A stretch of 64,000 nt of DNA from Salpingoeca rosetta (taxonomy: Eukaryota > Protista > Choanoflagellata): contig JAWQFM010000010.1 of the NCBI GenBank assembly GCA_033442325.1, forward strand, positions 1,843,638-1,907,637. Reading direction: 5' to 3'. The translations under genes and the position numbers were made by a program. Below are positions 47,737 to 64,000 of this stretch, piece after piece. Each line of letters starts with the position of its first letter. The stretch's first letter is position 1. The notes under the pieces are model-generated. The model was not told where the DNA came from and ran no database searches. It saw nothing but the letters and a program-made list of their open reading frames with translations.

Positions 47737-48311
47737 GCTTGGTTGGTAGTGTGTGTGTGTGTGTGTTGTGCGGTGGTTGTTCGTTTGTGGTTGCGTTCTC
47801 TTCTGCTGCGTTTGCGTTTGTTTGTGTGTGATTGGTTGGCGATCGGTTGATGAAGGTAGCAAGGACACACAACACACGCACGCACACTTACACACTCACA
47901 CACACACACACACACACACAAGCAGGCAAGCAGGCAAGCAAGGGAGTAATGATAGAGAACAAGAGAGGGAAGCGAGACTGAAAAGCAAAGGAACCATAGC
48001 AAGCAAGTCAGTTGAAGGGTGGTGGTGGTGGGAACGCAAGCCGACAACAGAGCGCACGCGCAACAGGAGGCAAAAACGTGGCAAGTGTCTGTCAGCCGTG
48101 CGGATGATGCCAGACAGGCAGGAAGGCACAGGGGAAGCAGGTGGGCCGAACATCGACGCAGCCGATGGCTGCTGAGCACGTACTGGCGGAACCGAAATGG
48201 AAGACACACTGACGACGTTGGGTGGGATACAGAGAGTGACGCAGACAGGCACAAACAGAGAGAGAGACATGTACACACACACACAAACACAGAGAGAGAG
48301 AGAGAGAGGTG

Positions 48312-48345
<34 letters not shown>

Positions 48346-48495
48346 CACATGCACAGACACATGCACACACATATGCACACAAACACACACACACACCCGC
48401 TAGAACATGCTCATACGAAACAAAGAGGTGACGCTACGACAAGTGCCCGTGTGGCACGCGATGCAAAGAAGACAGAACAAAACTAAACAACACAG

Positions 48496-49002
48496 CTATT
48501 GGTGGAACGCGAGCGGGGTGGTGAGGCGGCAGGGCAGGCCACCGCGGTCATCAGGATCGTGCAGGCGATAAAACGCAACCAGCTCGTCGAGGTTTGGGAA
48601 CTTGTTGTCTGCAACATCCTCCTCGCCGTGGTCAATGTGCACCTGTCCGCGCTCGTGGATGACGCGGAAGTGGGCGACCTTGCCTGGCGCCCGCATGGAC
48701 AGCGCAAGCTTCGAGTTGCGCATGCGGAACATGAACGTGCCATAGGACGAGCTGGTGTGCCACGCACGATTTTGAGGTTTGGGGGTTTGGGGTTTGGGAG
48801 GGGATGGGTGATCAGTGTGAGTTGCAGAGTGAAAGTGTGTGTAGGTGAGCGTGTGTATGTGAGCGCGCGTGTGTGAGCGTGCGTGTGCGCGGGTACGAGC
48901 ACACAACACAGAGAAGGCTAACAGGCAAAACGCAGGTACAACGACAACTAAAACGCAGACAGACAGACAGGCAGATAGACAGACACACGGGCACACACAC
49001 GG

Positions 49003-49066
<64 letters not shown>

Positions 49067-49081
49067 GCACACACACACACG

Positions 49082-49116
<35 letters not shown>

Positions 49117-49364
49117 CATGCAAACCGCTTTCACCTCTCGAGAAGGACGTCGGCCTCGTTGCGGGTCCTGTCCTGCTGCATCCACGCCAGGAGCGTGGCG
49201 TTGGACGTGAGGTCGAGCCCGCGCTTGAACGGCTGCGACTGCGGTGCCGCCTGCCGCTGGTCGGGAACGCAGTTGACATAAAGCGCATCCGGGGCAGTTG
49301 GCGGCGGCTGCCGGTGTGGCGGTATCGACGGCGGCGCAGCAACGACTGTAAACTGTTGCTGTTG

Positions 49365-49415
<51 letters not shown>

Positions 49416-50246
49416 TTGTTGTTGCTGAAACTTCATTGGTGTGGAGTACAGGTCCGCCGGCGGATCTGTGGGCTTGCGCTTTGTCACTGTCGAGTAGAGG
49501 GCGTGCGAGTCTGGAAGGGCCTCGTAAATGTCCTGCCCTGCGTCCTCCTTGTTTGCCTGCGTAAAGACGCGGTGGCCCTGCTGAGCATGCACCGCTGCTT
49601 CGTCCTTGGTCACCTCCTTGTACTCACCCTGAAGCACCACAAAATACTTCTCCAAAACGCGGGGCGCCGAGGACGGCGGCGCCACGGGCGTGATCGGTGG
49701 TGGTGCCGCCGTGGGCTGTTGCATCGTCGGTCGCGGGCCGAGCGTGGGCGGCACCAGAGGAGGCGCAGCCTGGCTCGGAGCGCCAACCTTGTCGGGGTCA
49801 TCGTACACAATGTTGTCAGCCATTGCGCCGCCGCTGCTGGGCGGGTAAACGCCGTTGGTTGGCGGGTGGGTGCCGTGGAACTGTGGCGGAGGCCCTCCGT
49901 GCTGAGGATACTGGTGTGCGCCGCCGCGATCCTGTCTCCCGGCCCCAGACGTCCGCCGGCTGGTGAAGTTGCCCAGGATCACCAGCACAACGAGGGCAAG
50001 CAAAACCAGCACCGAAATGAGTGCAGACGCCGACGACGCCAGGGAAGCGCTTGCACCAGCATCGACTGCATCCTCGACGCCGTCGTGGCTGTGGGTCTCT
50101 CCGGTGACGAAGGCCGCCGTGTCCCAAACACTGTCGTCTCTGGCATGTGCCGATCGAGCGTGAACCGTGGAAGCGCAGACGACGCAGGCCACCGCTGTGG
50201 CCCACAACAAAGCCGTTGTCAGTGAAGAAGGGCGTGGCCTTGTCAT
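48496..50246 (-). CDS. Single-pass transmembrane adaptor with multiple Tyr motifs and a C-terminal SH2 domain, 2 exons
   Basis: Signal peptide ALLWATAVACVVCASTVHA; TM ALISVLVLLALVVLVILGNF; motifs IVYDDP, EYKEV, IYEAL, LYSTV, LYSTP, LYVNC; SH2 fold AWMQQDRTRNEADVLLES|SSYGTFMFRMRN...LALSM...VAHFRV...FPNLDELVAFY...LPCRLTTP. Confidence 0.85.
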
Positions 50247-50597
50247 GACTGTTGCTGCTGCCGGCCGTGAAGGCGCAACGATGCTTGCCACCTACCGACC
50301 GCTCTCTGCCTCTGCTGGCTGCACTTGCGTTTCAAAACTGGAAGTGTGTTTGTGTCTGGCGGTGTTGTGCTGTGTTGTCGTGGGTGGTGAAGGTGAGTTA
50401 GGGTGATGATGCAGAGTGGGTGGATATGGTGTTTGTTTGCTTCTTCAACAACAACACAACGCAAATGGCATCGCTGACAATTTACTATATCTTATACCGA
50501 TTCTCGTACACGGCAAGAAGCAAGAGGGAGAAGAAGCGGGGGGCGTTCTTGGTTGCTTGCTTGATTGCTTGCACACACACACACACACCCACACACA

Positions 50598-50646
<49 letters not shown>

Positions 50647-50671
50647 GCACCCACACCCACACACACACACA

Positions 50672-50791
<120 letters not shown>

Positions 50792-50797
50792 CACAGA

Positions 50798-51453
50798 TCA
50801 TGCGTTGAGGCTGGCCAAGGTCTGGACAAGGGCCAGCTGGCGTTGCTGGACGCGCTGTCGCAAGACCTGCAAGTCAGCAGACTGTTGCGCAGCCTGCGTG
50901 TCCTCACGCTGCAGCAAGTGTATCACATCCTCCACGTTGCCGTGATGGTGGTGCGCATCCCCATCGTCACCCCCATCGCCGGCAGTGGGGGCAAACGCGG
51001 CTGTGAGCACGCGGCACAGGAACGAAATCTTTTGGTTTACACCGGCGCCCGCGCACGGTGCAGCCACCCCGTATAGCTCCTCTTGCTGCTGTTGCTGCAG
51101 CGGCGCAGTGGTGGTTGACACAGAGGCGTCCGCTGGTGCCACTGGCGGTGACGGTGGCGACGTTGCTTCCTCGTTGCCGGCCACTTTGCGCCGCTTGCTA
51201 AGATGGTTGTCGGTGGCGGCAGCGGCGGTGTGGGACCCGGGATGGTGCTGCTGTAGCGGTTGCTGTGTATGCAATGCGGGATCTTCAGATGCGTCATGCG
51301 CCTGCAACATTTGCAGGACAGGCATGACAAAAAGCAACTGCGATGAGCACGACACGAACCGTGATAGTCACACAGGTGATGGAGTCGTGGTGGGAGAGGG
51401 AGAAAGCAAATGCACAAAAAACGCACAAAACAGGCCACACACACACACACAGG

Positions 51454-51500
<47 letters not shown>

Positions 51501-54200
51501 TACACACACACGCGCACACACACACATACACACGCACGAACGCACCACTGCAGCTGTGCTTGTCCGTGCATGCGTAACTGCTTCGTCGTCTGCTTCATCA
51601 GCACCGCCAGAGACGTGCAGCCCGCGCGTAAACTCAAACCACAGCTTGGATGCGCTGCGACCAAAGTCGATGGCTGTGTTGAATGCCTCGGGCTCCGTGT
51701 CTCCGAGCGGTCGCGGTGCCGGCGCCCCAAACAGATCGGATCCGTCCACACCCGCCGTGAGCACGCCCGCCGCCCGCCGCAGGTGGTCCGGGCCCTTCAG
51801 GTGCACCTGCAGGTCCCCGGTGCTGGCAAACGCCTCCCCGCACAGCACGCACGACGTGAGGTTGGTGTTGTGGCGGCCGGCGTTCTGGCGGTGGCGGACC
51901 ACGGCTGCATCGCGCCGCCGCAGCGCCAGCTGGCACTTGGACGAGCGGCTCAGGTGCCGCTGCAGGTGCGTAAACACCCGTCGACACGAGATGCACGCCA
52001 CTTGGTTTGCATACTTGGCATCGCCCTTGTTCGCGTTGCTGGTTGTGGTGGTCGCGCTGGTGGCCGTGGCGGCCGCCTTGCTGGCTGAAGCCGTCGGTTC
52101 CGTCTTCACCGCTCTCGTCCCACGTGCCGGACCGCTCTCATCGTTCGCACTGCTGCAACTGGTGGTGGTTGTTGGCGCAGCGGTTGGTGTTGCGGTTGTC
52201 ATGGCTTGCTTACTGCGCTGTGTTGATGGCTTGCCCTGGCTGTCGCTTGAACCGTCTGCGCCAGGCTTGCGCGCGGCGGGCTCGGTTGCTGCGGCCGATG
52301 ACGATGAGGACGATGATGCTGATGTTGACGGTGTGCGGGAGCGACGGGTGGTGCGCGGCCGCGGGGAATTGCACGCGCTGCAGATGATGTCGCCTCGGTT
52401 CACAGTCGTGCACCGGCACACCCACTCGTCATCCTGCACAGCGAGGTGAGTGAGTGTGCGTTCGTGTGTGTGTATGACAGAGTGTGCGTGTGTGAGTGAG
52501 TGAGTGCGCGGGTGAGAGTGGATGCGTGAATGCGGGTATGTGGGCGAGTGTATCACAGAGAGAGAGAGAGAGATAGAGAGAGAGAGTGTGTGTGTGTGTG
52601 TGCGTGTGCGTGAGGCACGCAAGGAGAGTGCGTTTGTGTGGAAGAGCAATGAATTGGCGTCACGTCACATCAATCAGACCGCTACGGCAAGCAAGGGACA
52701 AACACATCAGCGCACCACGGCTGGGCATGCACTGCGGCGCCCAGGATTCTCAAACTGGAGCCCACGAAGTTCGCGTGGAACCGGCGCTGTTTTCGACGAT
52801 GAACGCCGCTTTTTCGTCCCCGTTCCCGCCGATGGTGGTGGCGCAGAGGTGGAGGTCGAGGTGGCACTGCTGCGCGTGGTGTTCGCCCGGCCGGGAACGG
52901 GTCGTCCAGCCTGGCGATGTGGACAAAATGAGCAGAGCAACCATTAGGGCATGTGAGTTGACGTTCGGAAGTGATGGGTGTGCGTGCACGATGCAAACAG
53001 GCAACGAAATCAGTGGAAGCAGTGAAGTCATGGAAGCAGTGTAGCAGCGCAGGTGGGAGACAACGTGTCGACACACCAAAAGCAATGTACGAAAACCCAC
53101 CCGACGCAGGATGGCAAGACGTGGATCTTGGAGATCAGTGTTGTTGACAGGGCCTTTCGTCTCTGTGCTGTGCGACGGGCTGGCAGATGCGACAAACGAC
53201 ACATCCACCTCGCTCTTGACGCTGGTGCTGGTGCTGGTGCTGGTGCTGCTGCCGTTCGTTGTGGTGGTGGCAGCGGCGAGGGCGGGGGAAGTTATTGTCG
53301 ACGTCGTTGCTGTCATGGCCGACTTGGACTGTCGATATGCAGACAGCTCTTCATGGCTTGTGAGTGTTCCTTTGATGACATAGAACTTGCCACCGACCTC
53401 AAAGGACCCGGGCACGTGTCGACCGCTCACTTCCTGCAGTTGCGAGGCGCTGAAGCCCGACAACTCAGCAAGGTTCAACGACGGGACCTCAGCTGACGAC
53501 GGGGATGTGCTTGTTGTACTTGCTGCTTCTGATGTTGATGTGATGGCTGTTGTTATCCAATGTTGGTCTTGTGTGGATGCGTAGGGGGCGCTTGTCGACA
53601 CGGGATGCCGCGGAGCGGACGGAATCGACACGTGCTCCTGTTCTTGCTCCCTTTCATTCTGTTGCTTCTGCTGCTGTTGTTGTTCTTGGTCGTGTAGCTG
53701 CTCGTGTGTACTCTTGTCTTCGTCCTCAATGACATCAAAAAGGGCGGCAGTGATGCTGCCTGCAGTAGGAATGTGCAGCTTGCCTTCACTCAGCTGCTGC
53801 ACTGTCGACCTGCAACATGGGTGCGCATCGAGACGAGATTGCGTTGTTGGTGGAGTGAATGGGCAACGTCGGCGTGTTAGAAAGAGGGGTGAAGGGGTTG
53901 GTAGAGGGTTAAGGTTAGGCAAAGTTTGGCACAGAGGTTGCGCCGAACCACCCGTACACATGCGCACACACACACACACATGCACACACACATGCACACA
54001 CACACACACGCACCACATCACATCACATCACATGCACACACACCACATCACATCACATCACATGCACACGCATGTTCTCTTACAGAGCACGTGCAGCAAG
54101 GGCAATCTCGTCGCAGCTGTCACTGTCCAGAGATGAGCGTGTATGGCCATTGCTACCCGCGTCTTCAATGCCTGCACACAGGAACGCTTCAATGGACTGT
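50798..54200 (-). CDS. Multi-exon protein with a RanBP2-like zinc finger and two C2H2-like zinc fingers; 5' exons uncertain (may extend toward ~56690)
   Basis: DDEWVCRCTTVNRGDIICSACNSPRP; CISCRRVFTHLQRHLSRSSKC; CVLCGEAFASTGDLQVHLKGPDH; in-frame splice DEIALAARAL|STVQQLSEGK; last exon ends ...LVQTLASLNA* at 50798. Confidence 0.6.
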
Positions 54201-56396
54201 CGGAACGACAAGCGCGTGTGTGCCGAGGACATGTCTCGCTCGCGCCAAGAAGGGTGTTGGTTGGTTGTTGTTGTGATGTGGCGGTTGTGGATGATTCCTG
54301 CACCGCATCCATGAAATTTCTGCAGGCAAACGGCAAAAGGCGAAGGATGATGAGGGTGAAGGTGCAGGTCGCTCACCACGTCGCTCCACGCGTCGCCACA
54401 CATCGCACCCCGGCTGCTGCTGTTGCAGCTCCTCCGATTCGACTGCCACTGCTGTGTTCATGCAGTGTTCCTACATGCGAGCAAGGTGAGCCCGTCATGC
54501 ATGCTTTGGTTGGCACATGGTGCATGGGTTGGTGTTGTTGTTGCTGTGGGTGCTTGGTGTTGCTGCTGCTGTGCCTCGTGCACCAGTGTAGCTGTGCAGC
54601 TCACATGTCATGCGTGTGTGCATGTGGCTGCAGGGGGGGGGGCGACTGCGTGAGGATCGTTGAAGGATGATGGGCGGTGCACACATGATGGAATGGGAGG
54701 AGCAGCTGTGGACACACACGTCCATGGTCATGGTGGGCACATCCTATCACAGCGACGCAGTCATATGCAGCAGGTGTGTGTGTGTGCGTGTGTGTGCGCG
54801 TGTGTGTGTGTGTGTGTGTCGTGGGGTGAGGGGGGGGAAGCAGAGGAGGGGGCAGGAAGTGGATATGTCTGCTGTGCTCACATGCCATACCTGTACCTCG
54901 TGTGTGCAATGTGTCTTGTTGATGTGTGTTGGTTGCGTGGGCGCCAGGGCCATATCAGAGGAGGGCAAGGAAGCCGCCATGAACGACACATCATCATCAT
55001 CAACCTCCCCATTTCTCTCTCTCTCTTCTCTCTCTTCCACCTCAGCTCCGCTGTCACCGCCATCACCATCATCATCATCGACCGCACAGCCGCCATCACA
55101 CGCCGGCCGACACCAGCTCCAATCTGGCGTGAGGCAGACATTGCACATGTCAGTCGCTCTCATGAAGAGGTGAGCATGTGCGTGTGTGTGGTGGTGGTGA
55201 GTGGGGACAAGATGTGTGCGTGGATGGGTGTCAATGCGGATGGTTGGATGGGGATGGCGTGTGGTTGATGATGCTTCGCTGTCAACCTCACCACCCTGCA
55301 TTCTCTCCCATCTTGTTTCCGTGCACACACACGTTTCACAGCGTTGAGGAGGCGCATGAAGCGGTGGAACCAACGACGATGACGATGACGAGTGCTGAAG
55401 GTGAGAGGGCGACTGAGATGTGTGTGCGAGTGTGTGTTGGTTGACACGTTGTGTTTCCTTGTTCGCCTCCCACTTTCCTTGTCTGTTCTGTCCGCTGTCT
55501 TTTCTTCTTCTTCCCCCTTTTTCGATTGATTTGGACACAGGGCCATGCATCCGCTTCCATCCAACCGACCAACCAAGCAGCCGAGCGAGCGAGCAAAGGA
55601 CACGGCGTGGCAAGGGGCCGTTGTTTTCACCCTTTCCACCACAAGCAACAACAGCAACAGCGGATGTGTGGCTGCATTGTGGATGAACTGGCCCCCTGCC
55701 TCTCATCCATCTCCACCTGCTCTTCGTCGTCATTGGTCACCAACAGCAGCGGCAGCGGCCGTGGATGTGGAGGTGAGATGAATGGTGGTGGTGGTGGGGA
55801 TTGTGGTGGTGATGTGTGATGTGTTGGGTGTGAACAACAGCATGTATGGGGAATGATTGTGCGGTGCTGGTTGGATGTCGTTGGGTCTGTTGGTGCTGGT
55901 GGCAATGGGCGTTGTTGTCGTTGATAACCTGATTCTGTGACAACTCACCTCTTTCTCCACACGCACACATGCAGAGTGTGATGTGCGTCGATGTGCCGTT
56001 GCCTCGTGTGACGACGATGGTGGTGATGGTGAATGATTTGTGGTGGATGTGGACTTGCGCACGCACACGCATGTGCAGATGTGATGCTTGTGGTGGTGGT
56101 GGTTGTGGTCGTCGTGGTGTGTATCTGTGCTTGGAATGTGCGTGCACAGGTGATGATGTGGGTGATGCGAATATGACAAAGGAGGTGGATGTGGTTTGTT
56201 TCTGCCATGCTGGCTCACTGCGTGGTGTCATTCTTGCTGATTTGGTTCTTTGTGCTTGCGCATGTGTGCATGTGTGCATGTGTGTGATTTGCACAGGACG
56301 GAGGCCGTTCTCTTCCCAAGCCCTCATGACACGACCAGGGCGATACACGCACACACAAATGTGCGAGAAAAGAAGACACAAGGTGAGACGCTGCCG

Positions 56397-56436
<40 letters not shown>

Positions 56437-56821
56437 TGATGGGTGGAGTGGTAGTACTCATTCACACGCATGCACGCATGTACACATGCACGTGTGCCAA
56501 CACATCAAAGCAGTCATTGGCTGTGGGGTGGTTGCACTGATGTGTGCCTCACATGAATCAATCTCACAACTCAAATGCGTGTGTGTGTGTGCGTGGCTGC
56601 AGGCGGACGTTGTGCGGGGTTCCCCAACCGAATTTCCCTTTCCTTTCCCAACCAATCGCCTTCGCTCTGTCATCGTCAGCCTTCCCCATGTGATGTGGAG
56701 CTGTTGAGGCGTGATTGAGACTGCGGCCAACGCAGGTATTTCAGCAGTGGTGGATGTGGTGCATGTGGTGATATTTTGTGCCTGCCTGCTGGCTCGCTTG
56801 GTTGCTTGCTTGTTGGGTGCT

Positions 56822-56921
56822 NNNNNNNNNNNNNNNNNNNNNNNNNNNNNNNNNNNNNNNNNNNNNNNNNNNNNNNNNNNNNNNNNNNNNNNNNNNNNNN
56901 NNNNNNNNNNNNNNNNNNNNN
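56822..56921. other. Assembly gap (100 N, probably unsized) truncating the IPT/TIG gene
   Basis: N characters in the sequence. Confidence 1.
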
Positions 56922-57142
56922 GTCGCCAACACCGGCGCTCCCGCTCCGAGCAACAACAACCACCTCCGTCGACGTCCCAGACACAACCATCGCCGCAACG
57001 CCGCCAAGCCGCACAGTCGCAGCAGACGACCCGCCTCCAAGCAGGTTCGTCCCGTTGATCGTCACGCGCGTCCCAAACTGGCCAGACGCAGGCTGCACCT
57101 GGTCAATCGCGCCCGCGGCCACATACGTGAACCCGCCAGTCG
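56922..57142. repeat. 221-bp exact direct repeat, copy 1 (identical to 63780-64000)
   Basis: Base-by-base comparison: gtcgccaacaccggcgctccc...aacccgccagtcg occurs at both positions, offset 6858 bp. Confidence 0.95.
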
Positions 57143-60100
57143 CAATCACCTCCGCACCAGTGTTGGCCGTCAGAACAACGTCCCCAGCACCGGCGCTCCC
57201 AGCAGCCGCAACCACAACAACGCGCGTGTTGTTCCCGCTCACAATCGAAGCCACGCTCACGCCGCCCAGCGTCACAGACACAAGGCTCGACCCGCTCCCG
57301 AGCAGCCGTGTGCCCTCAATCACAACGCGCGTCCCCGCGTGTCCGCTGTCGGGGCTCACACTCGCAACAGCACCAGGCTCGCTGTAGTTGAACCCGCCAA
57401 CCAGGCTCACAAACGCCCCGTTGGCAGACTGCACCACAACATCCCCAGACACCGCGCTCCCGTGCGCTGCCGCAACCACCACTACCTGCGTGTCGTTGAA
57501 CGACACAATCTCGCGCACAGACACGCCAGCAAGCGTCACGTCCCGCAGCGTCGTCGCGCCGCCAAGCAGCGACACACCCGTCACCGTCACCCGCGTGCCA
57601 CCCTGCCCAACACCAGGCGTTGCTCCGCTGATGCTCGAGGGCGCAACATACCGCCACGACGATGACAGGCTCACAACAGCGCCAGTGTCAGCAACAAGCT
57701 CAACCGCAGACACTGCCGTCGCCATCGACGCGCCAGCCTCAACAACAACAACGCTGTTGTTCTGGGTCACAATGCTTGCCGGCACACTCGCAAGCGACAC
57801 GCTCGCAAGCGACGCGCCGTACCCAAACAGGTTCGTGCCGCGGATCGTCACGCTCGTGTTCACCTGCCCCTGCGCCGGGCTCACGCTGCTGATGCTTCCA
57901 GCGACCTTGTACAGGAACTCGGCGCGGATGCTGCCGTCAGCACCCGTCACACTCTCCACAGTCTGCCCGTTGTCAGCCGTAATCGTCACAGTCACGTTCG
58001 TGTCAGCCGTGTTGGTGTTGGCCCCCGCGCGCACAACGACGCGCGACGCCGTGGCAAGCTCAATGGCTGTCGCTGACACAGTGCCCAGCCGCACAGCCGT
58101 GGCATCCGTGCCACCACCGAGCAGCCCAACACCGTCAATCGTCACGCGCGTGCCGCCCTGGCCAGAGCCAGGCGAGATGCTGTCCACAACACTGTATGTC
58201 CACGCATCCAGCTTGCGCACCGTCACCCCGTTGTTGCCAACAATGGTCACGTCTCCAACAGCCTCGCTGCGGCTGTTTGGCCCAGGGTTCACGCGCACAA
58301 CCGCCTGTGTCGATGTCGGTGTGCCCACAATGGACGCAGGCACCCCGCTCAATGAGATGGACGTCGCACTGCTCCCGCCACCCAGGATGTTGGTGCCGCG
58401 GATCGTCACAAGCGTGCCCGCTTGGCCTGTTCCCGGCGACACAGACGTGATGTTGCCCGCAGACAGCTGCTCCCAGGCATTGGTCGCCACAACAACAGCG
58501 CCCGTGTCCGCAATGAGAACAACATCGCCAACCGTGCTTGCCCCAAGATCGCCAGCCTCAAGGCGCGGAAGGTTGCAGTTGTCGCTCACCACCGTCGCCT
58601 CAAACCCAGCAAGCGTCGCAGCCGCAATAGCCGACCCTCCGCCGCACAGGTTCACACCAGCAATGTTCACAACAGTGCCAGCCTGTCCCGAGCTCGGATC
58701 CACCGTCAGAATCTCGCCATAGTCAACGTACGTGAACGCGTTCACCTTGGTGATGATCGCGCCATTGGACGATGTCACAACAATGTTGCCCACTGTAATC
58801 GCATCCACGCCCTGACCAAGCACGACCACAACCTCAGTGTCGTTCTCGCTCACAATCGTTGCCGGAACATCAACCACAGTCACATTGGCAACAGATGCAC
58901 CACCGCCACGCAGAGACGTGCCGTTGATGGTCACCCGCGTTCCCTCGCGGCCACTGCTTGGCACAGCAACGTCCACAGTGCCAACCTCCACATACGTGAA
59001 GCCATTCACAAGCGTGCTGTACGCGCCGCTGCTCGACGTCACAATCACATCGCCCTGCCCAGGCGCAGACACGGCCGCCCGCACAACAACCTGCGTATCA
59101 GACTCGCTCAGGATCGTCGCCTCCTGCCCGACCAGCGTCACAGAAGCAACAGCTGCACCACTGCCGCGCAGGTTCGTGCCCGCAATCGTCACAACGGTCG
59201 ATGCCTGGCCTTGTGCCGGCGTCACACTGCCAATGGCGCTCGCAACAGCGTACATCCACCCGCCGCTGCTTGTAGCATACGCGCCACTGTCAGACGTCAC
59301 AACAACGTCGCCCGTGCCCGCCGTTGCAGACGCAGCCACCACTCTCACCACGCTGTCGTTGCCGCTCACAACCATCGCAGGTGTCCCGGCCAGCGTCACA
59401 GAGGTGATGCTGCTGCCGCCGCCAAGCAGGCGCTCGCCGCGAATGTCCACGCGCGTGCCCACCTGGCCCACAGAAGGCACAACCGCCGTGACGGCGCTGT
59501 CCTGCAGGTACTCCCACAGCCCAGCACCAACCGTCCGGGCGCCGTTCGACGCCTCAAGCAGCACGTCGCCAACGCCAACAGTCCCGTTCTGCGCCACCGC
59601 AATCACGTCCGTGGCGTTGCTCACACGCACCTCCGCCGCCGGCCGTCCGCCAAGCAGCACCGTCGTGATCTGCGTCCCGCTCACTGGGTTGTTGCCCAGC
59701 AGCCGCACACCAGAAATGTGCACAACCGTGCCCCGCTGGCCTGCCATCGGCGTCACGTCCGTGATGGCGCTGGCCACCTCATACACCCACGTCTCCGTGC
59801 GACTCACGCGCGCCCCGCTGTCAGACGTGATCTCAATCGTGCTCAGGCCCAGGTTGCTGTTGGCGCCTGCGCGCACAACCACTTGCGTGGCGGTGCCCGA
59901 AACAACCTCCAACACGCCCACGCCACCAATCGTCACGTTCTGAACCGCACTGCCGCCACCAAGCAGGTTGGTGCCGGTAATCGTCACGCGCGTGCCGAGC
60001 TGGCCACGCGGTGGCTCCACAAGGATGATCCGCGCATCGCCAAGATACGTGAACACGCCGCTGCCGCTCACCGCGGCTCCCGTGTTCGACACAATCTCAA

Positions 60101-63100
60101 CGTCAAGCACGCCAGACATGCCGGTGCCAAGCACGGCCACAATCGACTCAGCGCTCACAGACACCACGCGCTCCACGGCAACGCCGCCAAACAGCAGCGA
60201 CGATACGCTGCTGCCGCCGCCCAACAGGTTGGTGCCGTTGATCGTCACCTGCGTGCCAGACACGCCAGAGTCGGGCGTCACCGCCGTCACCACGCCTTCA
60301 GCCAGGTACTCCCACGCAGCAGGCGCGCGCACCACGGCACCAGTGTCAATCTCAAGCACAACGTCCACTGCTCCGTTCGTCGCCGCCCCGCGCGCAGCAA
60401 CAGCCTCAATCAGCGTGTTGCTCTGCGTCTCGTTGATCGAGCTCACGGGCACGCCGCCCAGCAGCACACGCTCCACCGTGCTGCCCCCAGACAGCAGCCG
60501 CTCGCCTCGGATCTGCACCCGCGTTCCAACCTGGCCAGAGCTCGGCGACACAAGCGTCACGTTGCCCGGCTCCAGGTACTCAAACCCGTCAGCCAGCTGC
60601 ACAAACGCGTCGCTTGCCGCTGTCAGCACAACCGCGCCAACGCCTGCCGTGCCAGTCAAAGCAACAACCTCAACCTGCGTGTTGCTCGGCGTTCCCGTGA
60701 TGTTGGCGCTGACCCCGTTCAGTGTCACGCTTGCCAGCGACGTCGCGCCGCCAAGCAAACTCGTGCCCGTGATGGTCACGCGCGTGCCACTCACTCCGCG
60801 TGATGGCGACACGCCCGTCACCTGGCCCTCGGCAAGCTGCTCCCACAGCCCAACGCCGCGCACAATGGCCCCGCTCACAGACTCAATCTCAACGTCGCCC
60901 GTGCCAACCGTGCCGTTCGACGCCCGCACCACAACCATGGTCGAGTTGGCGCTCACAACGCTCATCACAGCGCGGCCGCCAAGCCGCACAACAGCCGGCG
61001 ACATCGCGCCGCCAAGCAGCCGCTCGCCAACAATCGTCACACGCGTCCCGCGCTGCCCGCTCGCTGGCATCAGCGTCGTCACAACGCCCGCGTCCGCATA
61101 CGTAAAGTCGCCCGTCGCAACAGCCCGCGCTCCAGTGTCGCTCTCAACCACAACACGGCCTGCGCCAGCAACGCTCGCTGCTGCACGCGCCACTACATAC
61201 GTGCTGTTGCCGCCAGCCTGCACCGCAGCATCCACGCCAGCAAGCGCAACGCGCGAAACCGTGCTGCCGCCGCCAAACAGCCGCTGCCCACGGATCGTCA
61301 CATACGTGCCCTCCTGGCCAGTCACAGGTGCAAAGCTGTCAATCGTGCTCGCCTCAACATACGTCCACACGCTGTCGCTGCTGTACGACGCACCCGTGTC
61401 CGCCGTCACCGTCACGCTGCCGTTCCCGGGACTGCCGCTCCCTGCAACTACAACGACGCTCGTGTCGTTGGCGCTCACAACGCTCTCCGCAGCTACCCCG
61501 GCCAGCGTCACGTTCGACACGCTGCTGCCGCCCGCAAGCAGACCGCTGCCAACAATCGTCACCCGCGTCCCAACCTGGCCGCTCGGCGGTGTGATGTCAG
61601 TCACGCTCGCCGCAGCCGTGTAACGGAACCCGCGGCGTCGCACAACGCTGCTGCCAGTGTTACTTTGCAGCATCACATCCACGACACCAGCGCTCGCAGC
61701 GCCAGCAACAGCCACAACTTGCGTGCTCGTTTGCACCTGCACGCTAGCAGCAGTGTTGCCAAACATCACAGTCACGCCAGTTCCGCCGCCAAGCAGGGAA
61801 ACACCACCAATGGTCACGCGCGTGCCGGCCTGGCCACTGCTCGGCTGCACACTGTAGATGGTGCTCGCCGCAACGTACGTGAAGGTGGAATCCGCAGTCA
61901 ACCGAGCACCGTTCTCGCTCACAAGCACAACAGAGCCAGAGAAGTTGGTGCTCACCTGCGGCGCGCTTGCACGCACCACAACCACAGTGTCGTTCTCAGA
62001 CACAATGGTCGCAGCAAGGCCAGCAAGCAGCACCTGCGCAACAGACTCCCCACCAGAGCGGAGCGAAGTGCCGCGCAGCGTCACCAACGTATCAGTCGTG
62101 CCCTGCACAGGCTCAACCAAAGTCACGTTGCCATCAGCCACATACTCCCACAGGTTGCCGCGGGTCACCAGCGCGCCCGTGTCAGCGGTCAGCTCAACGC
62201 CGCCAACACCAGCGACGCCGCCGCTCCCGGCCACAGCCCGCACAAAGAAGTTGGTCTGCTCCAGAATCTGCGCCTCAACGCCGCCAAGCATCACGCTCGC
62301 CACGCGCGACCCAGAGCCACGGAGGTTGTTGCCATAGATCAGCACTTCCGTGCCAGCAACACCACGCCCAGGATCAACACCCTCAACGTAACCAGGCGTG
62401 CCAAACGTCCACGCGTTGGTGCTGCTCACAATGATGCCCGTGTTGCCAACAACAACGACGTCGCCCGTCTTGGCCGTCGACGCATGCGCCGTCACGTTGA
62501 TCTGGCTCTGCGACGCGCCAGTCACCGTCGCCGCAACCCCAGCCAGCGTCACGCTCATCACATTGTCCCCGTCGCCAAGCAGCCGCTCGCCCTCAATCAC
62601 AACCCGCGTGCCGTCCTGGCCCACGCTCGGGCTCACGCTCGTGATGTTGCCAGGCTCCAGGTACGTAAACGCCCCGCTCGCAGTCACCGTCGCCCGCGTG
62701 TCAGACATCAGCACAACGTCCCCAGCGCCAGCCGTGCTCCGGCCGCCAGCAACAACAACGACAACCGTCGCGTTGGCGCTGTCAATCGACGTCACCTCAA
62801 CGCCGGCAAGCGTCACGCTCGACACGTCGCTGCCGCCGCCAAGCAGGTTCGTCCCGCGGATCACAACAACAGACCCACGCTGCCCAGTCGCAGGCTCAAC
62901 GCTGCTTACGCTGCCAGCCTCAATGTACGTCCAGCCATCAGCAAGCTCAACAAACGCCCCCGTGTCAGCCTCAATCCGCACACTGCCATTGCCAGCAGCA
63001 CCGGGCGCAGCGTCAACAACAACAGACGTGTCGCTCTCGCTCACAACCGTGCCAACAGCAACGCCCGCAAGCGTCACAGTGCGCACGCTCGACCCGCCGC

Positions 63101-64000
63101 ACAGCAGGTTCTGCCCGCTCAGCGTCACGCGCGTCCCTTCCTGCCCGCTCGCAGGCGACACAGTGTCGATGCTCGGGGGCGCAATGTACGTAAACGCCGT
63201 CCCACTCGACAGCACGCTCGTCGAGCCAGTGTCAGAGGTCGTCACAACCATCCCGCTCACCGCACTCGACTGCTGTCCTGCCTCAACAACAATCACCGTG
63301 TCGTTGCCGCTCACAACCTGTGCAGCTGCAACACCAGCGAGCGTCACGCCCTCAATGCTCGCGCCGCCGCTCAGCAGGTTGCTGCCGCTGATCGTCACAA
63401 GCGTCCCCGCAGAGCCCGTGCTCGGCTCCACGCTGCTGATGCTCCCGCGCGCAACATACTCAAACCCGAGCGAAAGAGACACCTCGGCGCCAGTGTCAGC
63501 AACAAGCAGCACGCTGCCGTTCGCACCAGCCGTGCCAAGCGCAGCCACAACAACTACCTCCGTGTCGCTGCCGCTCCCGCTCTCGTACGTCGCATCAACG
63601 CCAGCAAGCACAGCCCGCGCAATGTCCTGGCCGCCGCCCAGCAGCCGCGCACCTTGGATCGTCACGCGCGCATCCTTCTGCGCCTGCGCCGGAACAACGC
63701 TCGTAATCACGCCATCCTCAAGCTGCTCCCACGCGTTGCTCTTGCTCACAACAGCCCCCGTGTCAGCCACAATCTCAACGTCGCCAACACCGGCGCTCCC
63801 GCTCCGAGCAACAACAACCACCTCCGTCGACGTCCCAGACACAACCATCGCCGCAACGCCGCCAAGCCGCACAGTCGCAGCAGACGACCCGCCTCCAAGC
63901 AGGTTCGTCCCGTTGATCGTCACGCGCGTCCCAAACTGGCCAGACGCAGGCTGCACCTGGTCAATCGCGCCCGCGGCCACATACGTGAACCCGCCAGTCG
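56922..64000 (-). CDS. Giant intron-less tandem IPT/TIG-domain protein (partial; at least 26 complete ~88-aa domains)
   Basis: More than 7 kb open frame with repeated consensus I.SVSPSSGQ.GTRVTI.G..LLGGGSS...V.LAGV.A..VVS.NDT.VVV.A......GDVV...DTGA......F.Y, typical of IPT/TIG; many NxS/T sequons; open at both ends. Confidence 0.92.
63780..64000. repeat. 221-bp exact direct repeat, copy 2 (identical to 56922-57142)
   Basis: Same as above; the match runs to the window end on one side and to the gap on the other. Confidence 0.95.

What the first reader, a model, noticed from the sequence alone, without database searches (positions are those of the whole stretch)
56922..64000. Giant IPT/TIG protein apparently built from a 26-domain, 6,858-bp super-repeat
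Seen: the minus-strand frame encodes 26 consecutive, mutually diverged ~88-aa IPT/TIG domains, and the 27th is a nucleotide-identical copy of the 1st (63780-64000 = 56922-57142). The offset is 6858 bp = 2286 codons, in frame. Identity is cut only by the window edge and the N gap, so just 221 bp of overlap can be compared. Inference: the gene is a tandem array of near-identical 2,286-aa super-repeats (titin-like organisation), recently duplicated or homogenised, and the gap marks where short reads collapsed. At roughly 4 nm per Ig-like domain each unit would extend on the order of 100 nm, so this is a candidate giant surface or extracellular filament (collar link, matrix, adhesion or kin recognition). 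Known eukaryotic IPT arrays (plexin/MET, fibrocystin/PKHD1L1, Dictyostelium Tgr) have fewer domains, and I know of no such higher-order identical repeat in them.
Basis: partly seen in the sequence, partly recalled or inferred. Interest (0 to 1): 0.9.

Follow-up and report, generated by a model that had tools for sequence, protein, structure and literature searches.

The report
Collapsed 26-domain TIG super-repeat array
The last 7 kb of this Salpingoeca rosetta scaffold is an orphan contig that closes on itself. It is most likely the collapsed image of several near-identical 26-domain (2,286-aa) repeats of a giant secreted IPT/TIG protein, and the same 26-domain register is conserved across this protein family in choanoflagellates.

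Summary
Window 56922-64000 (minus strand) is one open frame of 26 IPT/TIG domains plus a 27th that is base-identical to the first, at an in-frame offset of 6,858 bp.

- Position 64000 is the end of the scaffold.
- The piece was a free-standing 7,079-bp contig in the original S. rosetta assembly.
- It sits behind a 100-N join, so it is a cycle contig.

Its shared parts (2,168 bp and 797 bp) are about 99.9% identical to a 5,300-aa TIG frame about 105 kb upstream. That frame spans the unit junction without a break.

Short-read contigs from four independent studies rebuild the cycle. They also reveal a third version of one segment that the assembly lacks. Word depths put the cycle at about 3-4.6 times its single variants.

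Relatives show the same architecture directly:
- One long-read metagenome contig holds 2.75 tandem units of 6,853 bp at 98-99% identity.
- Three other assemblies wrap at 7,203 bp.
- Two further giant genes have identical blocks at offsets of 26 and 52 domains.

A mod-26 domain register is conserved across the family, including in Monosiga brevicollis.

Verdict: the super-repeat is real and ancient. Copy number and exact locus in S. rosetta remain inferred. No paper describing this was found.

The parts
56822..56921 (.). 100-N join between the main scaffold sequence and the orphan contig. It is a scaffolding gap of conventional size, not a measured distance.
   Evidence: N run 56822-56921. (the product lies on a stand-alone 7,079-bp NCBI contig). 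(the draft assembly of this species was re-scaffolded with Hi-C; that this genome is that version is my inference). (no TIG coding or related sequence in 48000-56821).
56922..64000 (-). Orphan cycle contig. One open frame of 26 IPT/TIG domains plus a partial 27th. The unit is 6,858 bp, or 2,286 aa.
   Evidence: AlphaFold2 model of domains 1-3 has pLDDT 94.8, and the best solved fold is plexin A1 IPT3-6 at E 2.3e-12.
56922..57142 (-). Terminal overlap, left copy. It is identical to 63780-64000, the first domain of the unit seen again.
   Evidence: 221 of 221 bases.
63780..64000 (-). Terminal overlap, right copy. It ends at the end of the scaffold.
62326..64000 (-). Shared block S1, first part (domains 1 to about 6.5). 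With 56922-57635 it forms one 2,168-bp block that is contiguous in the upstream gene at C10:1790388-1792555. Only 2 mismatches (62907, 63477).
56922..57635 (-). Shared block S1, last part (domains 25-27). It is 100% identical to the upstream gene, which runs straight on into the sequence of 63779 downward. The unit junction is therefore spanned there.
   Evidence: Logan contigs of 4 runs cross the same junction.
57636..60804 (-). Segment c (domains 13-24). It is unique to this contig and only 24-52% identical in protein to the register-equivalent domains of the upstream gene.
   Evidence: No other copy of 90% or more in the genome. Present in runs of 6 studies.
60805..61601 (-). Shared block S2 (domains 10-12), 797 bp. 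It has 1 mismatch (61246) to the upstream gene at C10:1793310-1794106.
61602..62325 (-). Segment a (domains about 7.5-9), unique to this contig. In read-derived contigs it has two alternatives. Version a' has equal length, covers 61584-62109 and is absent from the assembly. Version b is the upstream gene's version.
   Evidence: joints 61583>62110 and 61601>62401; records 5, 14, 15, 17. (the loose end at 61601 equals the upstream gene). (a is unique in the genome).

Best explanation
The 7,079-bp piece is the collapsed image of a head-to-tail array of near-identical 6,858-bp units. Each unit encodes 26 IPT/TIG domains (2,286 aa) in frame, with no intron. There are at least two units, and probably about three to five.

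The array most likely lies inside the giant single-exon TIG gene at C10:1782909-1798808 (annotated product 5,178 aa). In the numbering of that gene's 59-domain open frame it would sit between domain 29 and the block of domains 30-41. That would give P-[S1-a-S2-c]n-S1-b-S2-d and a secreted, heavily N-glycosylated rod-like protein of roughly 12,000-16,000 aa.

The draft assembler kept one pass in the gene and left the loop as a free contig. Later scaffolding hung that contig on the nearest scaffold end.

The 26-domain unit is not an accident of this gene. It is an ancient module of the family: each position in the unit has its own counterparts in paralogues and in other species. It has been re-amplified or homogenised in register, independently, in at least five genes.

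Shown:
- the cycle;
- the shared blocks;
- three versions of one segment;
- the family-wide register;
- tandem units in relatives.

Inferred:
- the copy number;
- the position inside the upstream gene;
- secretion and function as a long extracellular filament or coat whose length is set by the unit number.
For: Evidence in S. rosetta:
- Cycle contig with a 221-bp exact end overlap, in frame. It is a stand-alone 7,079-bp contig in NCBI.
- The upstream gene carries S1 (2,168 bp, 2 mismatches) and S2 (797 bp, 1 mismatch) and spans the unit junction. Every unique segment has exactly one way in and one way out through S1 or S2, so a single path through the gene uses everything.
- Logan contigs of 4 runs from 4 studies (2013-2024) run from 62116 or 62567 through the junction to 61583 or 61601: records of 6,326, 5,893 and 5,577 bp. 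In run X1 the contigs break exactly at the four shared/unique boundaries.
- There are three versions between S2 and S1 (a, a', b), and a' is not in the assembly.
- Word depths. X1: cycle 212-261, a 166, a' 84, b 73. X3: cycle 450, a 374, b 98. X2: cycle 30.4, a 24.1, a' 7.4.
- Seven sites in c and a differ between runs of one clonal species, as expected for variation between copies.

Evidence in relatives:
- L036 holds 2.75 tandem units with a period of 6,853-6,855 bp at 97.9-98.9% identity.
- L033, L034 and L035 wrap at 7,203 bp, with one GT..AG intron per unit.
- PTSG_12890 and P0001 have 100%-identical blocks at offsets of 26 and 52 domains.

Evidence for the register:
- 44 of 45 pairwise best cyclic shifts are mutually consistent.
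- The top raw diagonals are spaced by 26.
- Permutation p is 0.002 or less for rep against the Monosiga protein, P0005, P0003 and P0001.
- Self-periodicity in the Monosiga protein has p = 0.0005.
Against: - No raw or long reads of S. rosetta were available. The tool warns that contig word depth is no copy number, and the S2 contig in X1 (227) is lower than the model predicts.
- In X2 and X3 the contigs pass the P/c and c/d branch points without breaking. This needs the ad hoc assumption that low-coverage branches were pruned.
- The upstream gene itself shows only weak 26-domain self-periodicity (0.39 against 0.365, permutation p 0.0065).
- The placement at the scaffold end could reflect a real second locus.
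- Version a' could be a variant that differs between cells of a culture rather than a further copy.
- Function is inferred only from signal peptides of relatives and from composition. No C-terminus or membrane anchor was found.
Confidence: 0.6

Rival explanations
1. The array is real but lies at a separate locus: a second, inverted paralogue at or near the scaffold end, or elsewhere on the chromosome. It would share the 2.2-kb and 0.8-kb blocks with the upstream gene through recent gene conversion.
For: The scaffolder placed the contig at the end of C10 in the opposite orientation. In X2 and X3 the cycle contigs do not break where the upstream gene's flanks should branch off. Long identical blocks between distant parts of one gene do occur in this family, for example 2,725 bp at 13,695 bp distance in the C3 gene.
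Against: No entry or exit sequence of such a locus exists in the assembly: c and a occur only on this contig. The 8.8 kb left of the gap has no TIG coding and no similarity to the upstream gene's flank. All junctions are accounted for by one path through the upstream gene. In X1 and X15 the contigs break exactly at the predicted branch points.
Confidence: 0.2
2. There is no multi-copy array, only one extra 26-domain stretch. The true gene would be P-S1-a-S2-c-S1-b-S2-d, a two-copy mosaic made by gene conversion. The third version a' and the uneven depths would come from variation between cells or strains and from noise.
For: This is the minimal path that uses every assembled segment once. The tool states that contig depth is not a copy number, and S2 in X1 is not deeper than c.
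Against: Version a' appears in two studies eleven years apart, at about a third to a quarter of a. It has the same flanks as a, so a third copy of the S2-x-S1 interval is needed in a haploid clone. Under this model S1 and S2 should be twice as deep as c. Observed are about 1.1-1.2 times in X1 and a single unbroken contig in X2, X3 and X15. Relatives do carry 3 or more units.
Confidence: 0.13
3. It is an assembly artefact: a chimeric or mis-joined contig whose end overlap arose from a single-domain duplication or an assembler error, with no higher-order repeat.
For: The contig is small, unplaced in the original assembly, and lies next to a gap at a scaffold end.
Against: About 93% of its sampled words are held by runs of 6 studies. 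Independent contigs of up to 6,326 bp reproduce its order, including the junction. Identity to the upstream gene runs 2,168 bp across the junction, not 221 bp.
Confidence: 0.03

Closest known systems
Titin and nebulin super-repeats (7- and 11-domain Ig/Fn3 super-repeats of titin's A-band; 7-module super-repeats of nebulin). Comparison from established knowledge.
   Same: A giant rod of small beta-sandwich domains. Domains a fixed number apart are more alike than neighbours, and each position in the unit has its own counterparts across units and species. This was tested here: offsets 26 and 52, and cross-protein register.
   Different: The unit is 26 domains of a single type (IPT/TIG). The protein is extracellular and secreted rather than sarcomeric. 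Some units are 98-100% identical at DNA level, whereas titin's are old and diverged. No periodic partner is known. Titin Ig tandems are only distant fold matches (ranks 18-26).
Apolipoprotein(a) kringle IV-2 array and mucin VNTRs (multi-kb, in-frame, near-identical coding tandem repeats that vary in copy number and collapse in assemblies). Comparison from established knowledge.
   Same: An in-frame multi-kb unit repeated head to tail at near identity, collapsed by short-read or Sanger assembly into a cycle. In the relative L033-L035 the unit includes its own intron, as in LPA.
   Different: The unit is far larger in protein terms (2,286 aa, 26 domains). Copy-number variation between individuals was not shown here: depth ratios of about 3 in X1 against 4-4.6 in X2 and X3 are only a hint.
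Plexin, MET/RON, fibrocystin (PKHD1) and PKHD1L1 IPT domains
   Same: The same domain family and fold. Pfam PF01833 matches. Plexin-A2 is the best PDB sequence match. Plexin A1 IPT3-6 and MET IPT are the best fold matches.
   Different: From established knowledge, those proteins have 3 to about 14 IPT domains mixed with other modules and a membrane anchor. Here there are 59-73 or more TIG domains in a row, and nothing else was detected. Sequence identity is only 15-20%.
S. rosetta PTSG_12890 (6,350 aa, partial), Monosiga brevicollis MONBRDRAFT_29861 (5,763 aa) and Salpingoeca infusionum transcript P016687: uncharacterised giant TIG proteins
   Same: True relatives, 38-44% identical over the whole query, and in the same mod-26 register. 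PTSG_12890 and the Monosiga protein have signal peptides. PTSG_12890 also has identical blocks at offsets of 26 and 52 domains and ends at a contig break inside a repeat.
   Different: They are annotated only as hypothetical proteins. In the Monosiga protein the units are old: 35-36% identity at offsets 26 and 52 against a 32% background, with no identical blocks.
Oscarella lobularis 'mucin-19-like' (XP_065838203.1) and similar metagenome proteins
   Same: Long TIG arrays found by the same search (P0021 cluster).
   Different: About 20 TIG domains in 2,355-2,968 aa and no 26-domain signal detectable at that length. The name was assigned automatically.

Membership tests
IPT/TIG domain (Pfam PF01833) | Sequence match to the family profile above the curated cut-off | tested here: met
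   545.9 bits against a cut-off of 20.9, E 5.5e-168, 22 stretches. 26 full domains plus a partial 27th with a profile of its own.
IPT/TIG domain (Pfam PF01833) | Ig-like beta-sandwich fold of the IPT type | tested here: met
   AlphaFold2 model of domains 1-3 has pLDDT 94.8 and is all-beta. The best solved folds are plexin A1 IPT3-6 (E 2.3e-12), MET IPT and Bacteroides SGBP-B.
Super-repeat protein (titin/nebulin type of organisation) | Domains a fixed number apart are more alike than other pairs within one protein | tested here: met
   Offset 26 or 52. P0002: 0.99. P0001: 0.50 and 0.66 against 0.40. PTSG_12890: 0.45 and 0.67 against 0.38. Monosiga: 0.345 and 0.356 against 0.319 (p 0.0005). Upstream gene: weak, 0.39 against 0.365 (p 0.0065). 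Control P0025: none.
Super-repeat protein (titin/nebulin type of organisation) | Position-specific counterparts of each unit position across paralogues and species | tested here: met
   44 of 45 best cyclic shifts are transitive. The best match falls in register for 12 of 26 and 13 of 26 domains against 1 expected. Top diagonals are spaced by 26. Permutation p is 0.002 or less for four large proteins. The C12 gene of the same genome does not share the register.
Super-repeat protein (titin/nebulin type of organisation) | Unit length matched to a periodic binding partner or lattice | not testable with these tools
   No partner is known. It would need localisation and ultrastructure.
Near-identical in-frame coding macro-repeat (LPA KIV-2 / VNTR type) | Head-to-tail junction of the unit, in frame | tested here: met
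   Offset of 6,858 bp, or 2,286 codons. The junction is contiguous over 2,168 bp in the upstream gene and in contigs of 4 runs.
Near-identical in-frame coding macro-repeat (LPA KIV-2 / VNTR type) | Two or more complete units on one molecule | tested here: inconclusive
   In S. rosetta the evidence is only indirect: a third segment version a', and depth ratios of about 3-4.6. It is met in relatives: L036 has 2.75 units on one 18.8-kb contig, and L033 spans two unit boundaries with introns of 210 and 217 nt.
Near-identical in-frame coding macro-repeat (LPA KIV-2 / VNTR type) | Copy number varies between individuals or strains | tested here: inconclusive
   Depth ratios differ between runs (about 3 in X1, about 4-4.6 in X2 and X3), but contig depth is unreliable.

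The most novel reading that the evidence does not exclude
The 26-domain unit (about 100 nm if extended) is a molecular ruler. These secreted TIG giants would form a periodic extracellular structure in choanoflagellates, such as theca, glycocalyx, collar links or colony matrix. Only whole-unit gains and losses would be tolerated, which would explain why amplification and homogenisation hit the same 26-domain register independently in at least five genes. Unit number would vary between strains and set the length of the filament.
Probability: 0.2. Interest if true: 0.9.

Novelty: new variant of a known kind. Interest (0 to 1): 0.74.

Why it matters
[quoted passage not shown] Here a family of their largest secreted proteins turns out to be built on a conserved 26-domain module.

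- The module is old enough to be shared by Salpingoeca and Monosiga, yet it is still being amplified to near-identical multi-kb units.
- This gives a second, extracellular example of the super-repeat principle known from muscle titin. It raises a testable question: what periodic structure or constraint fixes the number 26?
- Practically, the reference genome under-represents these genes. The product of the upstream gene is probably two to three times longer than annotated. At least three such genes end at gaps or scaffold ends.
- One relative is filed under a Planctomycetes genome bin. This affects proteomics, knock-out design and horizontal-transfer screens that list IPT/TIG genes.

Tried and rejected
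- Dot plot beyond 64000: impossible, because the scaffold ends there.
- Raw-read depth and long reads: all 24 runs offered are kept only as Logan contigs.
- Loose ends at 57563 and 62765 looked like a further context of segment c. They map to an unrelated gene on C33 with no real similarity, so they were dropped as chance short matches. Other loose ends come from paralogues on C3 and C12 and from other parts of the upstream gene.
- Calibrating depth with the 2,725-bp C3 repeat failed, because its own copy number is unknown.
- An ancient 26-domain period inside the upstream gene alone is weak. It became clear only with more proteins.
- The C3 terminal contig behind its 100-N gap is not TIG.
- Contigs L037-L040 of other relatives do not wrap on themselves.
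- The C12 giant TIG gene shows no 26-domain period and no significant register with this unit.
- C-termini: all annotated models stop at what look like exon ends, and no membrane anchor was found.
- Literature: no paper was found on TIG super-repeats or on PTSG_12890. One paper lists IPT/TIG among domains of candidate horizontally transferred genes in S. rosetta, without detail.
- All 40 script runs were used, so some numbers (for example the L034 intron) were read off printed sequence.
Full report
**1. What is in the sequence**

Window 56922-57142 and 63780-64000 are identical at all 221 bases. The offset is 6,858 bp, or 2,286 codons. On the minus strand one frame is open over the whole 7,079 bases (2,359 aa); the other two frames have 69 and 131 stops. 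Pfam TIG matches at E 5.5e-168. A profile built from the domains finds 26 full domains and a partial 27th that repeats the first. An AlphaFold2 model of domains 1-3 is confident (pLDDT 94.8), and its best solved match is plexin A1 IPT3-6.

**2.

- The window is G000:C10:1843638-1907637, and the scaffold is 1,907,637 bases long, so position 64000 is the scaffold end.
- The organism is Salpingoeca rosetta: a paralogue is PTSG_12890.
- The annotated product of this stretch (P0004, 2,341 aa) lies in NCBI on a contig of exactly 7,079 bp. The stretch was therefore a free contig with overlapping ends, the usual trace of a cycle in an assembly graph.
- The 100-N run is a join. The draft assembly of this species was later re-scaffolded with Hi-C (PMC10232365). 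That G000 is that version is my inference.
- The 8.8 kb left of the gap has no TIG coding and nothing in common with the flank of the related gene.

**3. Relation to the gene about 105 kb upstream**

C10:1782909-1798808 (+) is one open frame of 5,300 aa with 59 TIG domains and no N gap. Its annotated product is P0005, 5,178 aa. Four segments of the orphan contig relate to it as follows:

| Segment | Window coordinates | Relation to the upstream gene |
|---|---|---|
| S1 | 62326-64000 plus 56922-57635 | One contiguous 2,168-bp block at C10:1790388-1792555, 2 mismatches |
| S2 | 60805-61601 | C10:1793310-1794106, 1 mismatch |
| c | 57636-60804 (domains 13-24) | No close copy anywhere in the genome |
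| a | 61602-62325 | No close copy anywhere in the genome |

Segments c and a are only about 40% identical in protein to the register-equivalent part of the gene.

The unit junction is thus spanned by real sequence over 2.2 kb, not 221 bp. Every segment has one way in and one way out through S1 or S2. The simplest path is P-[S1-a-S2-c]n-S1-b-S2-d inside that gene.

**4. Independent reads**

Runs of six studies hold about 93% of the contig's sampled words. All are kept as Logan contigs only.

- Laid on 56922-62921, contigs of X2 (6,326 bp), X3 (5,893 bp) and X15 (5,577 bp) start at 62116 or 62567. They carry exactly 858 further letters, the length of 62922-63779, and continue at 56922 through c and S2.
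- In X1 the contigs break at 57606-57635, 60805-60834, 61572-61601 and 62401-62430. These are exactly where the contig and the upstream gene part ways. Both contexts are therefore real.
- Between S2 and S1 there are three versions: a; the upstream gene's b (joint 61601>62401, identified); and a' (61583>62110, same length, under 95% alike). Version a' is not in the assembly. Three versions in a haploid clone need three copies of that interval, hence at least two units besides the gene's own copy.
- Ten sites differ from the reference. Seven of them differ between runs, as expected if contigs pick different majority letters among copies.

Word depths point the same way:

| Run | Cycle | a | a' | b |
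|---|---|---|---|---|
| X1 | 212-261 | 166 | 84 | 73 |
| X3 | 450 | 374 | not seen | 98 |
| X2 | 30.4 | 24.1 | 7.4 | not seen |

No genomic sequence of a clone can be rarer than single copy. The cycle is therefore about 3 to 4.6 copies. The tool warns that such depths are not copy numbers, and one value (S2 in X1, 227) does not fit, so I treat this as an estimate only.

**5. The same architecture elsewhere**

An exhaustive profile search with segment c brought in giant TIG proteins.

- P0002 (ENA) has 56 domains. Domain i and domain i+26 are 99% identical over 30 pairs. Its 18,837-bp long-read contig is 2.75 tandem units of 6,853-6,855 bp at 97.9-98.9% identity.
- Three MEGAHIT assemblies of another organism give contigs of 7,541, 7,344 and 7,290 bp that wrap on themselves at 7,203 bp, or 2,401 codons.
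- In that organism each unit is one exon of about 6,993 nt plus a GT..AG intron. L033 holds two such introns, of 210 and 217 nt. It is therefore a eukaryote with at least two distinguishable units.
- PTSG_12890 on C3 has ten domains that are 100% identical at an offset of 52 domains (2,725 bp at 13,695 bp). It also has a 578-bp block at an offset of 6,865 bp that ends at a contig break.
- The metagenome protein P0001 shows the same two offsets.

**6. An ancient register**

- Within proteins, offsets 26 and 52 stand out even where no identical blocks exist. In Monosiga brevicollis MONBRDRAFT_29861 the z-scores are 3.2 and 4.5 and the permutation p is 0.0005. A TIG protein of another type shows nothing.
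- Between proteins, the best cyclic shift modulo 26 is mutually consistent in 44 of 45 pairs.
- The best-matching domain lies in register for 12 or 13 of 26 positions, against 1 expected.
- The top raw diagonals are 26 apart.
- Permutation p is 0.002 or less for this unit against four large proteins.
- The C12 giant TIG gene of the same genome does not share the register, so the signal is not a by-product of the method.

**7. What it is and how it probably works**

Shown:
- a collapsed cycle of a 26-domain unit;
- blocks shared with a neighbouring giant gene;
- a family-wide 26-domain module that is repeatedly amplified or homogenised in register.

Inferred:
- Three to five units sit inside the upstream gene, giving a product of roughly 12,000-16,000 aa.
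- The protein is secreted. Signal peptides are present in PTSG_12890 and the Monosiga protein. Each unit has 34 N-glycosylation sequons, 12 of them in one conserved column, and almost no Cys or Lys.
- The domains follow each other without linkers.
- No anchor or C-terminus was found.
- The mechanism of amplification is most likely unequal crossing-over between long identical blocks created by gene conversion. That only multiples of 26 are seen in five genes suggests a constraint on the register.

**8. Known or new**

Super-repeats (titin, nebulin) and near-identical multi-kb coding repeats (apolipoprotein(a) KIV-2) are known from established knowledge. IPT/TIG arrays are also known, but with far fewer domains. 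I found no paper on a TIG super-repeat or on these choanoflagellate proteins. One paper merely lists IPT/TIG among domains of candidate transferred genes. Earlier notes of this scan flagged the upstream gene and the C3 gene as giant single-exon TIG proteins. They did not mention the period.

I rate this a new variant of a known kind, with interest 0.74. The main uncertainties are the copy number and the exact locus in S. rosetta. Long reads would settle both.

Noticed in passing
G000:C3:2773427-2792697 (loci L021-L023): PTSG_12890 has a 5,731-aa open frame. C3:2774375-2777098 recurs at 2788070-2790794 (99.9%, offset 13,695 bp, or 52 domains). C3:2785255-2785832 recurs at 2792120-2792697 (offset 6,865 bp), and that copy stops at a 100-N gap 4.3 kb before the scaffold end. 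This gene is probably also missing units.
   Followed up: partly
G000:C12:1706229-1720496 (loci L024-L026): Another TIG array: a 4,755-aa open frame with 55 domains, boxed in by a 6,229-N gap and a 100-N gap. It shows no 26-domain period and no significant register with this unit, so it seems to be a different branch of giant TIG genes.
   Followed up: partly
L033:72-281 and L033:7275-7491; L035:988-1197: In the uncultured relative, each 7,203-bp unit carries one phase-1 GT..AG intron of 210-217 nt. The intron is placed inside the conserved G-T motif of a TIG domain, so the repeated unit is exon plus intron.
   Followed up: partly
L037 (NCBI GCA_002686945.1, contig NYYZ01000016.1, 7,107 bp): One of the closest relatives of this unit (about 50% in-register domain identity) is filed as a protein of a Planctomycetes metagenome bin. 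The contig is one TIG frame open from end to end. It is most likely a mis-binned piece of a eukaryotic giant gene.
   Followed up: partly
window 57766, 58797, 59136: At these three sites the contigs of all four runs agree with each other and differ from the reference. These are either errors of the draft assembly or minority letters among the copies.
   Followed up: no
G000:C10:1798800-1798900 (just after the upstream gene's open frame): The 5,300-aa frame ends directly at a long TG microsatellite. The family's annotated C-termini in three species end with similar short Cys-containing motifs that look like exon ends. The true 3' exons are therefore probably missing from the gene models.
   Followed up: no
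G000:C26:818800-824300, C1:1850497, C3:289139, C17:85112-86422: There are further long open frames with TIG domains in this genome (3,987, 9,148, 3,543 and 2,338 aa of open frame around the matches). They were not examined for periodicity.
   Followed up: no
run X15 over window 60805-61601: In run X15 (kind not on record) block S2 has a word depth of about 298 against 19 for the rest of the cycle. This is unexplained. It could be an RNA or amplicon library, or a further high-copy context of S2.
   Followed up: no
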